From contig MCFE01000245.1 in assembly GCA_002104905.1 (NCBI GenBank), positions 1 through 64,000 of the forward strand: 64,000 nucleotides of DNA. Direction: 5' to 3'. The notes below the pieces were generated by a model. The model did not search any database, was not told where the DNA came from, and saw only the letters and a list, made by a program, of their open reading frames with translations. Made by a program: the position numbers and the translations under genes. Below, in pieces: positions 20,017 to 24,289 of the stretch. Each line of letters starts with the position of its first letter. Positions within the stretch are counted from its first letter, which is position 1. Origin of the DNA: Basidiobolus meristosporus CBS 931.73 (taxonomy: Eukaryota; Fungi; Basidiobolomycota).

Positions 20017-20513
20017 TGAATAAACAATATTAGAATAATTGGATACCAGAACCCTCTAGGTATTCATGGCATATATAGCATTTTCCCAGTCCACCTCCCA
20101 ACTTGCATGTGGGAATATCGATGGAACAGCTGTCTCAGGAGGGGGGGACCAATAAAGGAGTCACGTAATAAGCCATCCACTTTTCAGCTTGATTCCCACA
20201 ACTGTCGCGAGATAACTAGGAGTCATTCTGACGTACGCAATAGCAATCCGTAGAGATACAAATCACACCCGCCCACTTGGCTGATCCATTCCAAAACACC
20301 CACAAACACCGTCATTCAGATTAATTTATTCAGAAGTAATGTTACATCGAGGAAGTCGTGAAACAGATGTTCCTATTAACGAGAGTACTTTGTTACAATG
20401 TGGACATATGGAAAGGTTAAATACTTCTCATAAGCGGTCTCCATGATTCTATGCTCTTGTGATTAACAATACAATAGTTGACAAAAGACTCGGAGATTCT
20501 ATGTAGCAGTCGG

Positions 20514-21287
20514 TTATTGCCGATGTGAGGGCTTGAGCTCTCTAGGGGAATATCGGTGGGGCAGGAGCTCCTCCAAGGAAAGCACTTGAGTGGATCTATC
20601 TCGCTTGACCACATACACGTTTAGGTCTGTTCCCCATTCTGCCATGAACTGTCTGAAATTGGAAGGTCTGGTTGAGAAACCCCCCTCAACGGTATCCGAG
20701 AGAGACGCTTACCTGCAAATACCGCAGGGGAATATGAAGCTTTGAGAATCACTAACGAGGTTAAGGAGATGAGTATCTTTTTTCATGAGAATAATGTATC
20801 CTTCTTTACATCTTACGTGGCAATGGCAATGGCGGTGAATTTCGACTCCCCATCCGTCTTATAGTGAAGGAGATCACCAGTTAGTTGAAAGCTTGCGAAG
20901 GCGGTGAAACGGTTCAATTTACCAAAGCCCTTGAGAATGCGGCTCTTTCTGCGCAAATACCTGCTCCCAAAGAAGCGTTCTCCACATTGCAGCCTAGCAT
21001 AGGTCGAGACAGGTGAGGACGGGTGGCACATAACGACAAGGCGTAACTGCTCACCTTTGTAAAAATTGTTGGTGTCTGTGAGCAGAGCTGCTCCTACTTT
21101 GAAATTGGAATAAGGGACATAGGAGTTTGCTTGAGCTAATGTCACAAAACGTTCAGTACGATTGGCTTCGGAATCTATTTTTATCAAGGCGAAGTTCACC
21201 TTCCAGAGCTAAATCTATTAATTGATTGATCTGATCGGCGCTGATGTCAACAGAAGATGCGGATGACGAGAAGCCAGATATTGACAT
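20514..21287 (-). CDS. CDD1: Cytidine deaminase (tetrameric CDD1/Cdd family); possibly the C-terminal part of a BED-finger fusion starting at 21711
   Basis: Six exons read in frame: PYSNFKVGAAL, GCNVENASLGAGICAER (Zn ligand Cys, catalytic Glu), PCGICRQF (two Zn Cys), ELLP; stop TAA at 20516-20514. Confidence 0.93.
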
Positions 21288-21473
21288 GTGTTGGGGCTCG
21301 TTTATCCTCCGATGTTTTACCTCGGATTGCTTCTCTTCTGCAAAAGAGTCAGGAGATAGATCAAAGCTGGCTTACGCAACATCATACTAACCTTGCTGCT
21401 TCAACAAGTGATCGCGGTGTTGGGGGAAGAGCATATCTCATTAGTAGGCCACCAGCAGGCATGTTTGGCATAC

Positions 21474-21711
21474 CGTACTTTACCTCAGTTGTGAAGGCGC
21501 GTTTGACTTCCTCTGGAGCGTATTGGCATGTGCGGAGATGCGACGCCATCGTTCTGGGGATGCCGAGAATCCCTGGCACTCGGTCGATTCCGAGAGCTTT
21601 GATGCAGTAATTGCAGTGAGCATGATAATGACTTTTATTACATCGTATTCCTCTCCAAAAATGGTCCCATATAGGCTTTCGAGGACGCCCGATCATAGAA
21701 GTCGAAGACAT
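21474..21711 (-). CDS. BED-type zinc finger exon (hAT-transposase-like DNA-binding module), predicted to splice onto the cytidine deaminase
   Basis: GRPRKPIWDHF...HAHCNYC...MASHLRTC: conserved W/F, CxxC and HxxxC ligands of BED fingers; GTATGC donor at 21473. Confidence 0.75.
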
Positions 21712-24289
21712 TGAAGATCTTTCAGGAAATAAGCATTAATATATCTGAGTGGCAGTATCTCTTGACTCTCAACAAGTATCCTATTGATCCCTACTCTATG
21801 CCTGTACGAAAGATAGGGTGGTTGAGGCGCGGTTGATGATTCAGTGAAAAGCAAGAACTAGGTTGAGTGAAAGGATCACCATTGACTCACCATCATTATT
21901 TATACAAAATCGCTTGGAGCGCCTATTGGGCACCCGCATATATATCTACCTGCGCTACTAGATAACTCAAATGTTTCAGTAATTGGGTGACTTCCTTTTT
22001 CTATTGTAAATGATCGGGATGTATCTCCTTCACTGAACCAAATATGGACCCCACGATCCATTGGGTCGTCGTTGACGGATTTTCTTTTTCGAACAAACAA
22101 ACCATTCGATGCCAGAAGAATTATGCTTCGAATGCAATATCTGTCCTAATATGTTTGGCGCTCCTTCTAGTGGATAGAACGTGTGACACATCTTTGCACG
22201 ATCTATGTCTTTGCGAGAGTGCCTTGAGTGCTTAGAATAAATCCAAATTAGCTGAGAATTAGGACCACGATAAGCGGCCATATCCCAATATGTCCCGCTG
22301 ACAAAGAACAGCATTAAGCAATATCGATTACACATCCTGGGGTACCTCTAGTCCAAAATGGGATAGGTATGACACCAACAAGTATTGCTCCCTGTACGCG
22401 ATCTGTGAGACCTCTCTGCGAAGCAATGGTACAAACTAGGCACACCCGGTGATTGTTGCAGTAGCCTCGGATGAGTCCAAGTATTTGTGGTTAGACCGCA
22501 CGTAACCCCATCACTCCGAGCACTCTTATGATCATGCTTTTACCGAAACCTAATCTTTACTTCTCCAACCTTGACAAGTCGTGGAAATCCCGTCAGCTTT
22601 GGGAAATGAAGCCGGCCCTTTGGTACGACATCCCACTTCAAGCTGCTACCTTGGAAGCTTGAATAAAGCGCATACAGCGCTAGTTCAGCGGTAATTGGAG
22701 GCATGGTTGAGAACTGAGGTTAAATAGCTACTGCCAAAGGCGTTATATAATTCTAAATAAATTTGAGTTCAGTAGGCTTCCACCCTTTCGACACATCCAT
22801 TCGGCCAGGTCAACAAATTTGGCACATGACCTGGGCCATATTTAGTGAATGATCCTTAACATAGCCAACTCCTGAAGCTAAGGTGTTCATCAAAAATGGA
22901 CGAAGTGTTCTATAGAATATGATGGTCTCTAGACCTTCCGATTTGGATAGCTGATGCCTAGCAATATGGAAAAACGGTGATTTCAGGGTCTACTGACATG
23001 GCTGATTCAAGCTGTCAAATATCATATATTTGATTGATGTTTACAATAGTGCAACATTGTTGTATATTCGATTATTTATTTGTACACGCGATCGTGCTAT
23101 CAAGGCGAAGGTTGCAAGTGCGAACTGACGACCATATAAGAAACTTGGTTTACCCGTGGTAGTGTCCTACAGACGAGCTAGAATTGGTAAACACCGGTTG
23201 AAAGTACCGAAATGGCTTAATTAATATGGCGAATCACCTTTACTGTCAACAAACTTTCAAAACTATCCAGCATTTGGAATCCCAATGATACGCTGTCTAG
23301 AGCCTTGGTGCCTTGGCAAACTTATTTGTGGCAACATCGTTGATTGAAAAAGGAATTCAGTGAGGGTTAGCGAATCTTGATGGCGCAACCCAAGAGGCCG
23401 AAACATTATCCACTGTCCTTTAAATGACTCCACTTTCTGACATAGAAAATTTCCGATACAGCAGCTTTGGGAATACATAATGGGAACATTCGTTGTGCCT
23501 TTCAATGGAATATCTCCTCTTAATAGCAACTAATGTGATGAATGGAAGGTCATGGGGAACCCCACCATGGTATAGGTAGGGGTATTACTATATCTTTACA
23601 ACATCAATCTAGCTACCCACCCTCGCTACATTGGACTCGACTCAACTCTAGTATTTTCAAAAAAGCTGCATATAATTATACAATGCTTTGTTATTTGGAG
23701 AGAATTCTCTCTGACAACATTCATTCACACGCTTATCGCTTCCACCCACCCACATTGTTGAGGGTTCCTCTAGCCATTAATAGATGGCATCAAAAATAGA
23801 CATTTGCCACATTGGATCATTTCCAATTGGGTCGAAAACTGGTTTTCTCGTCAGATTTATGATCTTGATTGGTTTATCCCAATTAGGCAGGAATCCAGAT
23901 CAAATTATACGCTTGGTGTTAATGTCCAATTTAGACATGCGGTACATCATGTCGATAAAGCTTAATCACTAACCATTTGTATATAGCTTTTCTTTTGCAA
24001 TGATACATACCGCGCACCTCCGGTTCGGCTCTCTTTACACTTATTCTCTGCTGAAATCCTCTACTTATCTCATCCTCGCTGCGCATAAAACTTGACCACC
24101 TGTGGCTACTTGTGATATACCGTATATGGCCCTGATTGCGTCATGCTCGATCCCCCTTCCAAAAATGGATGCTTTGTCATCGGTGCATTGGTCACTGAAT
24201 AGTAGCAAGATAATGCTTGGTTGGACTTCGCTTGATTTATTTCCATGAACGATTCTATAATTATATCAAGGGATATACAACGATGAAGT

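What the first reader, a model, noticed from the sequence alone, without database searches (positions are those of the whole stretch)
20514..21711. Predicted BED zinc finger-cytidine deaminase fusion: a candidate DNA-tethered deaminase
Seen: a BED-type finger ORF (IWDHF...CNYC...HLRTC) ends only about 95 bp upstream of a complete cytidine deaminase on the same strand. A canonical donor (TACG|GTATGC, 21473) and acceptor (CTGAC...TTTGCAG|, 21338) define a 136-nt intron that joins them in frame. Exons 21711-21474, 21337-21200, 21135-21055, 20993-20923, 20857-20817, 20751-20713 and 20652-20514 sum to 747 nt = 248 aa + stop, with linker EEKQSEVKHRRINEPQHMSISGFSSSASS. A second route (37-nt intron with a weaker GAG acceptor plus the GTTAGT donor at 21391) gives the same frame. 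Known: BED fingers are DNA-binding modules typical of hAT transposases and domesticated derivatives; CDD-family enzymes are Zn deaminases of free cytidine, normally small standalone tetramers. Inference: a transposase-derived DNA-binding domain captured by a deaminase could recruit C-to-U activity or nucleoside metabolism to chromatin or transposon ends (TE defence or editing), or act as a metabolite-sensing regulator. I know of no characterised protein with this architecture, but could not search.
Basis: partly seen in the sequence, partly recalled or inferred. Interest (0 to 1): 0.88.

Follow-up and report, generated by a model that had tools for sequence, protein, structure and literature searches.

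The report
BED finger–cytidine deaminase fusion gene
This fungal (Basidiobolus) gene really does join a DNA-binding-type BED zinc finger to a complete cytidine deaminase, an unusual and uncharacterised pairing that is spliced through a 4-base micro-exon and conserved in two copies in two species, but its deaminase looks like an ordinary nucleoside enzyme rather than a DNA editor.

Summary
The window is Basidiobolus meristosporus CBS 931.73 (contig MCFE01000245). Assembled contigs of two public runs join the finger exon to the deaminase exons in frame. Four genomic loci, two paralogues in each of two species, keep the same 8-exon structure. dN/dS is 0.02–0.07 on the finger and 0.03–0.06 on the deaminase. 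The internal ATG 21287 is not conserved.

The donor is GAG|GTAAAG (21484|21483), and a 4-nt micro-exon CAAG (21395–21392) lies between two introns. The product is 246 aa, not 248.

The finger is a divergent BED type (W, F, CxxC, Hx3C invariant in 30 homologues). It scores below Pfam's cut-off itself, but some homologues pass.

The deaminase is a full homotetramer-type CDA (human CDA, E 1e-36) with every catalytic and ribose-binding residue. It descends from a duplicate of the housekeeping Basidiobolus CDA.

Most likely it is a DNA- or chromatin-tethered nucleoside deaminase, or a nucleoside-sensing regulator. DNA or RNA editing is possible but disfavoured.

No search here found the architecture outside Basidiobolus, and no paper describes it. 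Public gene models exist but are mis-built. The scan also flagged the paralogue (s1-242936).

The parts
21897..22102 (-). Conserved upstream non-coding blocks, either promoter or 5' leader: GTTTGTTTGTTC (22102-22091), CCAAT at 22064, 21986 and 21929, TATAAATA (21904-21897)
   Evidence: The blocks are invariant across all four Basidiobolus loci while the sequence between them has indels. The X3 contig runs unbroken from 21484 to about 22104, so the transcription start is not resolved.
21722..21736 (-). Four-codon upstream ORF, ATG CTT ATT TCC TGA (MLIS*), 10 nt before the main ATG
   Evidence: Present as MLIS* or MLIF* in 3 of 4 loci, inside the conserved block TATTAATGCTTATTTC.TGAAAGAT. Function not tested.
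21484..21711 (-). Exon 1, 228 nt: start codon, AT-hook-like GRPRKP and a BED-type CCHC zinc finger (76 aa)
   Evidence: W15, F18, C33, C36, H58 and C62 are invariant in 30 homologues. 19 of 30 hit Pfam zf-BED. dN/dS is 0.02-0.07. The AF2 model has pLDDT 82, and its best PDB fold match is the ZBED1 BED domain. The donor GAG|GTA is conserved in 4 loci and used in contigs.
21396..21483 (-). Intron 1a, 88 nt, GTAAAG...GCAG
   Evidence: Skipped in contigs of X3 and X7. Only 37% pairwise identity among loci. It holds the in-frame tail and stop of the 109-aa ORF, which is not conserved.
21392..21395 (-). 4-nt micro-exon CAAG. A tandem acceptor 3 nt upstream would give the 7-nt form CAGCAAG (21398-21392)
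   Evidence: The two extra letters at the joint fit only CAAG. The island AG|CA(G/A)CAAG|GTTAGT is 85% identical in 4 loci, inside introns that are 34-37% identical. Both B. ranarum public models use the 7-nt form.
21338..21391 (-). Intron 1b, 54 nt, GTTAGT...TTGCAG
21200..21337 (-). Exon 3, 138 nt: basic and Ser-rich linker (EEKQSEVKHRRINEPQH MSISGFSSSASS) plus the first helix of the deaminase. It contains the non-conserved ATG 21287
   Evidence: Linker dN/dS is 0.17-0.38. Linker pLDDT is below 50 in the full-length model of the B. ranarum paralogue P0002. The Met at 21287 is Thr in P0002, P0003 and L004.
21055..21135 (-). Exon 4, 81 nt: PYSNFKVGAALL substrate-pocket segment
   Evidence: Same length and borders in all four loci. 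Aligned to human CDA.
20923..20993 (-). Exon 5, 71 nt: GCNVENA ribose-binding loop and the CAE zinc and catalytic motif
20817..20857 (-). Exon 6, 41 nt
   Evidence: The joint 20817/20751 is seen in X3.
20713..20751 (-). Exon 7, 39 nt: PCGICRQ zinc motif
   Evidence: Joints on both sides are seen in X3.
20514..20652 (-). Exon 8, 139 nt: C-terminal strands, ELLPHRYSP with the conserved aromatic residue, and the stop codon. Contigs of X3 and X9 end near 20435, giving a 3' UTR of about 80 nt

Best explanation
Window 21711-20514 (minus strand) is one 8-exon gene of Basidiobolus meristosporus. Its mRNA joins a finger exon, through a 4-nt micro-exon, to six deaminase exons and encodes a protein of about 246 aa. 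The protein has three parts: an N-terminal AT-hook-like GRPRKP plus a BED-type CCHC zinc finger; a disordered basic, Ser-rich linker of about 35 aa; and a complete homotetramer-type CDD/CDA cytidine deaminase.

The deaminase half is a duplicate of the housekeeping Basidiobolus CDA, which is still present as a plain 142-aa gene. After the duplication it acquired the finger exon and changed quickly on the stem branch. It has since been kept under strong purifying selection as two paralogues in at least two species. All of this is shown (about 0.9).

The mechanism is inferred (about 0.4-0.45 for the first option). Four subunits would form the usual CDA tetramer, whose closed active sites still deaminate free cytidine or deoxycytidine, or modified analogues. 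Four flexibly tethered BED/AT-hook arms would hold the enzyme on DNA or chromatin. That gives a nuclear, DNA-anchored nucleoside deaminase rather than a polynucleotide editor.
For: Transcripts. Contigs of runs X3 (at least 99% alike) and X7 (95-99% alike, another organism) carry exon 1 joined in frame to exon 3 via CAAG. The X7 contig spans 21622-21484 plus 21339-21216, running across ATG 21287.

Conservation. Four loci have the same eight exons: the window, L004 in the same genome, and L001 and L002 in B. ranarum. The window is syntenic with L002. A third organism (run X4) has two genomic copies with finger and deaminase exons at the same spacing.

Selection. dN/dS is 0.02-0.07 on the finger and 0.03-0.06 on the CDA, with dS above 1. 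Variable sites in exon 1 fall 18/6/53 by codon position.

No independent start for the deaminase. Met 21287 is Thr in the other three loci. No block inside intron 1 is conserved except the micro-exon island, whereas blocks upstream of the finger exon are conserved.

The enzyme is intact. It aligns end to end with human CDA 1MQ0 (E 1.2e-36). The alignment keeps F..VGAA, GCN(I/V)ENA, CAER, PCGxCRQ and the C-terminal ELLP..F. pLDDT is 95-98.

Origin. The four fusion deaminases form a clade (100/100) that is sister to the canonical Basidiobolus CDAs (100/98), with a stem of 0.84. Canonical CDAs are present in both species (P0177, P0004).

The finger is BED type. It has the invariant W, F, CxxC and Hx3C. 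Homologues pass Pfam's zf-BED cut-off, and one carries the hAT-associated DUF659. The ZBED1 BED domain is the top fold match.

Established knowledge: BED fingers are DNA-binding modules.
Against: No full-length, fully spliced transcript was seen. In run X3, introns 21199-21136, 21054-20994 and 20922-20858 appear only unspliced. Unspliced forms also outnumber spliced ones about 2:1 at the other introns.

Run X3 is labelled 'DNA?'. I infer it is cDNA from its spliced joints and its uneven depth.

An internal transcription start that uses ATG 21287 in this species cannot be excluded from contigs.

The finger itself scores below Pfam's cut-off (13 bits against 20.6), and the fold match is weak (TM 0.51, E 0.7).

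DNA binding, tetramer formation, localisation and substrate are all untested.

Seven fusion-specific substitutions sit at otherwise conserved CDA positions, for example Y to L in the ENAS-Y loop and F to W. Together with the long stem branch they show that the enzyme changed after the fusion, so its substrate may not be plain cytidine.
Confidence: 0.6

Rival explanations
1. It is a nucleoside-sensing DNA-binding regulator. The CDA tetramer serves mainly as a ligand-binding and oligomerisation module, and cytidine or uridine occupancy changes how the four BED arms bind promoters, possibly the gene's own conserved upstream blocks.
For: A housekeeping CDA remains in the genome, so the duplicate is free to take a new role. 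The stem branch is long and there are seven clade-specific substitutions. A tetramer carrying four DNA-binding arms on flexible linkers resembles an oligomeric transcription factor. Upstream blocks, including a 26-nt stretch identical in L002 (24 nt in L001), are shared by paralogous loci whose dS exceeds 1.
Against: The catalytic Glu and all zinc ligands are strictly kept in four genes, which a pure sensor need not do. There is no evidence that the finger binds those blocks.
Confidence: 0.2
2. It is a finger-guided polynucleotide deaminase. The BED finger places the enzyme on specific DNA or nascent RNA, for example transposon ends, where it converts C to U as a natural 'zinc-finger base editor' for genome defence or editing.
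For: The architecture is a DNA-binding module, a flexible linker and a zinc deaminase. BED fingers derive from hAT transposases, and some homologues carry DUF659. Iyer et al. 2011 (PMC3239186) describe CDD/CDA-clade branches fused to CCCH fingers (kinetoplastids) and to SAM and Tudor domains (oomycetes). The fusion clade carries Y to L in the loop next to the ribose-binding residues.
Against: The enzyme belongs to the C-terminal-hairpin CDD/CDA clade. It retains the ribose-binding N and E and the C-terminal aromatic residue that close the pocket around a free nucleoside in solved tetrameric CDAs. It has no insertions or deletions relative to human CDA. The fusion-specific changes are mostly conservative: K to R, S to T, E to D, F to W.
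Confidence: 0.12
3. The fusion is not the functional product. The locus mainly yields a finger-only peptide (109 aa from the intron-1-retained RNA) and/or a plain 152-aa CDA from ATG 21287, and the joined mRNA is a minor by-product.
For: Unspliced intron 1 has higher contig depth than the spliced joint (about 50 against 20) in X3. ATG 21287 exists in this locus.
Against: The 33-aa tail of the 109-aa ORF is not conserved, and retained introns stop at different places in the other loci. Met 21287 is absent in three of four loci. The frame across the junction, the micro-exon and the linker are kept in all four loci. A plain CDA already exists elsewhere in the genome.
Confidence: 0.05

Closest known systems
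Homotetrameric cytidine deaminases (human CDA 1MQ0, mouse 1ZAB, B. subtilis 1JTK, yeast Cdd1 1R5T) and the canonical Basidiobolus CDA (P0177, P0004)
   Same: The C-terminal 140 aa or so align end to end (E 1e-36 to 1e-22). They share the three-Cys zinc site, the catalytic Glu, the ribose-binding N and E, the Phe of F.VGAA and the C-terminal aromatic residue. The fusion deaminases are the sister clade of the Basidiobolus housekeeping CDA.
   Different: These enzymes are stand-alone proteins of 130-150 aa. Here about 110 extra N-terminal residues (finger plus linker) are encoded by two added exons. Seven clade-specific substitutions occur at conserved positions.
CDD/CDA-clade deaminases fused to nucleic-acid or chromatin modules (Iyer et al. 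2011, PMC3239186): kinetoplastid LmjF36.5940-like with CCCH fingers, and an oomycete branch with SAM and Tudor domains
   Same: A CDD/CDA-type catalytic domain is joined to a domain that binds nucleic acid or chromatin.
   Different: The partner domain is different (BED), and so is the lineage (Basidiobolus, Zoopagomycota). The catalytic domain here is a recent duplicate of the housekeeping enzyme rather than a distinct old branch. Pfam's LmjF365940-deam model scores only E 0.022, below its cut-off. That survey does not list a BED fusion.
BED zinc fingers (Pfam PF02892; ZBED1 2CT5, ZBED2 2DJR, ZBED3 9L4J; hAT transposases)
   Same: It has the W..F aromatic pair, CxxC, then Hx3C. The predicted fold's best PDB match is ZBED1, with ZBED2 and ZBED3 in the top 12.
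   Different: It is a divergent subfamily with a GRP..P.W.HF..G...N..H.HA.C.YC signature, and it scores below Pfam's cut-off itself. Its nearest relatives head 480-1100 aa oomycete proteins that have no transposase domain. No hAT catalytic or dimerisation domain is present here.
AID/APOBEC deaminases and engineered zinc-finger deaminases
   Same: The concept is shared: a zinc-dependent cytosine deaminase coupled to a targeting module.
   Different: AID/APOBEC belong to the helix-4 division with an HxE motif and an open groove for ssDNA. This enzyme has CAE, the C-terminal hairpin topology and a closed nucleoside pocket. It may or may not work like them, and it is not a member.

Membership tests
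Homotetrameric CDD/CDA cytidine deaminase (Pfam PF00383/PF08211) | Zinc site made of three cysteines (C-A-E ... P-C-x-x-C) with a catalytic Glu; class definition as in PMC6686228 | tested here: met
   GICAER and PCGICRQ are present in the window product and in all four loci. PF00383 scores 63 bits against a cut-off of 25.
Homotetrameric CDD/CDA cytidine deaminase (Pfam PF00383/PF08211) | Single core of about 130-150 aa, colinear with solved tetrameric CDAs, including the nucleoside-binding residues (F.VGAA, GCNxENA, C-terminal aromatic residue) | tested here: met
   The orthologue P0003 (residues 45-192) aligns to residues 7-138 of the 140-aa human CDA chain 1MQ0, E 1.2e-36, with one 1-residue gap and all these motifs kept. 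The window product carries the same motifs.
Homotetrameric CDD/CDA cytidine deaminase (Pfam PF00383/PF08211) | Forms a tetramer and deaminates free cytidine and deoxycytidine | not testable with these tools
   Needs purified protein, with SEC-MALS and an activity assay.
Homotetrameric CDD/CDA cytidine deaminase (Pfam PF00383/PF08211) | Stand-alone single-domain protein | tested here: not met
   About 110 extra N-terminal residues are joined in frame in transcript contigs and in four loci.
BED zinc finger (PF02892) | Cx2C ... Hx3-5(H/C) zinc ligands preceded by conserved aromatic residues | tested here: met
   W15, F18, C33, C36, H58 and C62 are invariant in 30 sequences.
BED zinc finger (PF02892) | Scores above Pfam's gathering cut-off (20.6 bits) | tested here: inconclusive
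   The window finger scores 12.3-13.1 bits, E 0.1-0.18. 19 of the 30 aligned finger sequences (27 phmmer homologues plus the three Basidiobolus fingers) hit zf-BED at E 1 or lower, and as whole proteins P0130 (35 bits), P0158 (36 bits) and P0138 (27 bits) pass. The oomycete homologues are named 'BED-type domain-containing' by UniProt.
BED zinc finger (PF02892) | BED fold | tested here: inconclusive
   The AF2 model has pLDDT 82. The top PDB hit is ZBED1 BED 2CT5 (TM 0.51, E 0.7, prob 0.51), and ZBED2 and ZBED3 are in the top 12. No hit reaches E 0.001.
BED zinc finger (PF02892) | Binds DNA | not testable with these tools
   Needs EMSA, SELEX or DAP-seq.
hAT transposase or domesticated hAT protein | RNase-H-like DDE catalytic domain and hAT C-terminal dimerisation domain | tested here: not met
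   The product is 246 aa. No Pfam match other than the weak BED and the deaminase.
AID/APOBEC-like polynucleotide deaminases | Helix-4 division topology with H-x-E and PCxxC; acts on ssDNA or RNA | tested here: not met
   The motif is C-A-E, and the domain is colinear with the C-terminal-hairpin CDD/CDA clade. Activity was not testable.

The most novel reading that the evidence does not exclude
The protein is a natural zinc-finger-guided cytosine deaminase that acts on DNA or nascent RNA at sites chosen by the BED/AT-hook arm. That would be a genome-defence or editing system (RIP-like, or a natural 'base editor') built from a housekeeping-type CDA in an early-diverging fungus.
Probability: 0.1. 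Interest if true: 0.9.

Novelty: new variant of a known kind. Interest (0 to 1): 0.6.

Why it matters
Tetrameric CDAs are textbook stand-alone salvage enzymes. A version carrying a transposase-type DNA-binding finger has been kept under strong purifying selection as two paralogues in two Basidiobolus species. That implies a selected function coupling pyrimidine deamination, or nucleoside sensing, to DNA.

If the enzyme acts on nucleosides, it points to a chromatin-local step of pyrimidine or modified-nucleoside metabolism in an early-diverging fungus. If it acts on DNA or RNA, it would be the first polynucleotide editor derived from a housekeeping-type CDA, and a compact natural finger-deaminase of biotechnological interest.

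The work also corrects three public gene models. It documents a conserved 4/7-nt micro-exon with a tandem acceptor, and functional micro-exons have scarcely been described in fungi (PMC11121469).

Tried and rejected
- **RNA runs.** The RNA-only run search listed no run, and the tool was unreachable three times. The 'any' search gave 9 runs.
The 136-nt intron and the 37-nt + GTTAGT route produced no joint in any contig, and the donor at 21473 is not conserved in the other loci.
- **JGI model P0001 (340 aa).** It uses a 25-nt 'intron', reads through or partly reads through three real introns, and destroys the CAE motif. I rejected it as the protein, although it mirrors the intron-retaining RNA in X3.
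- **Combined finger + CDA alignment A3.** MAFFT split the finger fragments, so I discarded it. The full-length model therefore used a shallow finger alignment, and the finger came out at low confidence there.
- **Sequence search of the finger against PDB chains.** No hit.
- **Literature.** No paper holds a BED finger together with cytidine deaminase and fusion, and none describes a zf-BED-deaminase fusion (the only paper holding both words is an unrelated plant-breeding review). Iyer et al. 2011 has no BED fusion.
- **Transposase remnants or an extra gene in the 2.6 kb upstream.** Only short conserved non-coding blocks were found.
- **Rfam on 20300-22400.** Nothing.
- **Pfam on the long oomycete finger-bearing proteins.** Nothing beyond the weak BED.
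- **Depth-based test for an internal transcription start.** Contig mean depths cannot resolve it.
Full report
**What the sequence shows**

On the minus strand, ORF 21711-21382 (109 aa) carries IWDHF...CNYC...HLRTC. Pfam gives a firm cytidine deaminase for the downstream part: PF00383 E 2.6e-17 and PF08211 E 8e-10. It gives only a sub-threshold BED match for the upstream ORF: E 0.18, 12.3 bits against a cut-off of 20.6.

**Source organism and public models**

A protein search with the 248-aa model put the locus in Basidiobolus. P0001 is B. meristosporus CBS 931.73 K493DRAFT_375631, 340 aa. It is the public model of this very locus: its gene DNA is identical to window 20514-21711 on contig MCFE01000245. 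That model already fuses finger and deaminase, but it uses a 25-nt 'intron' and reads through or partly through three true introns, which destroys the CAE motif.

B. ranarum has three relevant proteins:
- P0002 (239 aa, 82% identical, 96% of the query covered) is a clean finger-deaminase fusion.
- P0003 (192 aa) starts at a Met inside the finger.
- P0004 (142 aa) is a plain CDA.

**Comparative anatomy**

I fetched both B. ranarum loci (L001, L002). I then found a second B. meristosporus locus, L004, which is annotated only as a 120-aa CDA (P0220).

All four loci have the same eight exons: 228/231, 7, 135-141, 81, 71, 41, 39 and 115-139 nt. All give intact finger-linker-deaminase ORFs of 239-247 aa. 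The full finger exon lies upstream of the truncated models P0003 and P0220.

The window is syntenic with L002, with RNase_T upstream and a run of short-chain dehydrogenase (SDR) genes downstream.

Alignment of the 5' part shows the following:

| Region | Mean pairwise identity |
|---|---|
| Finger exon | 80% |
| Intron 1a | 37% |
| Intron 1b | 34% |
| 19-nt island (AG\|CA(G/A)CAAG\|GTTAGT) between the introns | 85% |

Variable sites in the finger exon fall 18/6/53 by codon position. The donor GAG|GTA is invariant and corresponds to window 21484|21483.

Nei-Gojobori dN/dS is 0.02-0.07 on the finger, 0.03-0.06 on the deaminase and 0.17-0.38 on the linker, with dS above 1.

Met 21287, the start of a would-be plain CDA, is Thr in the other three loci. 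There, the deaminase has no conserved start codon of its own.

**Transcript evidence**

No run was listed for the RNA-only search. The 'any' search listed nine runs, and I laid the Logan contigs of four of them.

Run X3 (at least 99% alike, same study as the genome) holds both unspliced and spliced forms. It shows joints at 20713/20652, at 20817/20751, and from 21484 to 21339 with two extra letters (TG on the + strand).

Run X7 (95-99% alike, another organism) has a 265-nt contig covering 21622-21484, the same two letters, and then 21339-21216.

The joint reads ...ACTGAG CA AG AAGAG... on the gene strand. The only way to produce it is a 4-nt micro-exon CAAG (21395-21392), flanked by gcAG| and |GTTAGT. 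The 7-nt form CAGCAAG would leave five extra letters, not two.

B. meristosporus has a tandem acceptor (gaAGcAG), so both forms stay in frame. B. ranarum has CAACAAG, and its public models use 7 nt. The mature product is therefore 741 nt, or 246 aa, with ...FTTE-Q-EEKQ... at the junction.

Skipping the micro-exon would shift the frame and stop after six codons. Retaining intron 1a gives the non-conserved 109-aa ORF.

**Caveats on the run data**

- X3 is labelled 'DNA?'. I take it as cDNA because it contains three canonical splice joints on the gene's strand and very uneven depth (17.8 upstream, 50-63 in the gene body, 93 at the 3' end). This is an inference.
- Contigs show presence, not absence.
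- Introns 21199-21136, 21054-20994 and 20922-20858 appear only unspliced in X3, as in the JGI model. No fully spliced molecule was observed.
- An internal start cannot be excluded from these data.

**The finger**

Only P0001 also has a deaminase.

The next hits (E 1e-11, 40-49% identity) are the N-termini of 480-1100 aa oomycete proteins. UniProt calls them BED-type, and they have no other Pfam domain. Further hits are Rhizophagus proteins that pass Pfam zf-BED (35, 36 and 27 bits), and a Dentiscutata protein with the hAT-associated DUF659.

In a 30-sequence alignment, W15, F18, C33, C36, H58 and C62 are invariant, and GRP..P is nearly so. 19 of 30 members hit zf-BED, and no other family recurs more than twice.

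AlphaFold on that alignment gives pLDDT 82. The best PDB fold match is the ZBED1 BED domain (TM 0.51, E 0.7), with ZBED2 and ZBED3 in the top 12. This supports the call but is not significant.

I conclude that the finger belongs to a divergent BED subfamily, preceded by an AT-hook-like GRPRKP. The AT-hook reading is my inference from the motif.

**The deaminase**

The B. ranarum orthologue's deaminase half (P0003 residues 45-192) aligns with human CDA 1MQ0 over residues 7-138 of the 140-aa chain (E 1.2e-36). It also matches mouse, Bacillus and yeast tetrameric CDAs.

All of the following are retained:
- the Phe of F.VGAA;
- GCN(I/V)ENA, which holds the ribose-binding Asn and Glu;
- CAER;
- PCGICRQ;
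- the C-terminal ELLP..(F/Y).

B. meristosporus and B. ranarum each keep a canonical 142-aa CDA (P0177, P0004).

In an ML tree of 44 CDAs, the four fusion deaminases form one clade (100/100). That clade is sister to the canonical Basidiobolus pair (100/98), on a stem of 0.84 against 0.11.

Seven positions that are at least 75% conserved in 202 CDAs carry a fusion-specific residue: G to N, Y to L in ENAS-Y, T to A, K to R, S to T, E to D, and F to W. At the first of these the canonical Basidiobolus CDA also has N.

The full-length model of P0002 has the deaminase at pLDDT 95-98 and the linker below 50.

**Mechanism**

Shown: this is one gene, the finger and enzyme are joined in frame in RNA-derived contigs, both halves are under purifying selection, and the deaminase half descends from a duplicate of the housekeeping CDA.

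Inferred: the protein forms the usual CDA tetramer with four flexibly tethered DNA-binding arms. Because the nucleoside pocket is unchanged, I think it most likely still deaminates free (deoxy)cytidine or modified analogues while anchored on DNA or chromatin (about 0.4-0.45).

Three alternatives remain:
- a nucleoside-sensing regulator that may bind its own conserved upstream blocks (about 0.2);
- a finger-guided DNA or RNA editor (about 0.1-0.12), disfavoured by the closed-pocket residues;
- separate finger-only and CDA-only products (about 0.05), disfavoured by the conservation pattern.

**Comparison and novelty**

Iyer et al. 2011 (PMC3239186) list CDD/CDA-clade enzymes fused to CCCH fingers (kinetoplastids) and to SAM and Tudor domains (oomycetes), but no BED fusion. 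Full-text searches found no paper on such a fusion.

My searches found the architecture only in Basidiobolus: two named species, plus one other organism seen in run X4 that has both halves in two genomic copies. Other BED subfamilies fused to CDAs elsewhere would not have been found.

Public records hold uncharacterised and partly wrong gene models of it. An earlier first-stage note of this scan (s1-242936, 1191 letters, same genome) flags what is almost certainly the L004 paralogue.

I rate it a new variant of a known kind: real, conserved and of unknown function.

Noticed in passing
window 21398-21386 (-); L001:4315-4321, L002:4148-4154, L004:2797-2803: A conserved micro-exon lies between two short introns. 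It is 4 nt (CAAG) in transcript contigs of B. meristosporus-like runs and 7 nt in the B. ranarum models. B. meristosporus has a tandem acceptor (gaAG cAG), so both forms keep the frame, and skipping the exon would truncate the protein after the finger. PMC11121469 states that functional micro-exons had not been described before in filamentous fungi.
   Followed up: yes
window 22102-21897 (-) and 21736-21722 (-): Upstream non-coding blocks are conserved in all four paralogous and orthologous loci: GTTTGTTTGTTC, three CCAAT motifs and TATAAATA. A 4-codon uORF (MLIS*) sits just before the start codon in 3 of 4 loci. GT follows the TATAAATA block in all loci, and a conserved ATAG|AGTAGG lies about 100 nt downstream, so a 5'-UTR intron is conceivable. 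The X3 contig runs unspliced up to about 22104. Rfam finds nothing here.
   Followed up: partly
window 21199-21136, 21054-20994, 20922-20858 (-): These three introns are seen only unspliced in run X3. The JGI protein model (340 aa) reads through two of them and most of the third, which destroys the catalytic CAE motif. This is either strong intron retention in that sample or pre-mRNA-rich data. The public models P0001, P0003 (N-terminally truncated) and P0220 (finger missing) all need correction.
   Followed up: partly
proteins P0121-P0143 (Phytophthora, Bremia, Pythium, Lagenidium, Saprolegnia, Aphanomyces): The nearest relatives of the Basidiobolus finger are not fungal. They head an oomycete family of 480-1100 aa proteins that has no other Pfam domain. 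One 361-aa member of the Phytophthora nicotianae cluster is named 'Endonuclease V' by its source, but it has no Pfam match.
   Followed up: partly
window about 20016-14717 (-): A tandem array of four SDR genes (adh_short, about 258-291 aa) lies directly downstream of the fusion gene. At least three of them are syntenic in B. ranarum (L002).
   Followed up: no
window 23901-23764: A 140-nt block, 80% identical to L002:1488-1626, lies in the 2.6-kb gap between the RNase_T gene and the fusion gene, about 400-500 nt past the RNase_T stop. It could be a 3' UTR element or an unannotated small exon.
   Followed up: no
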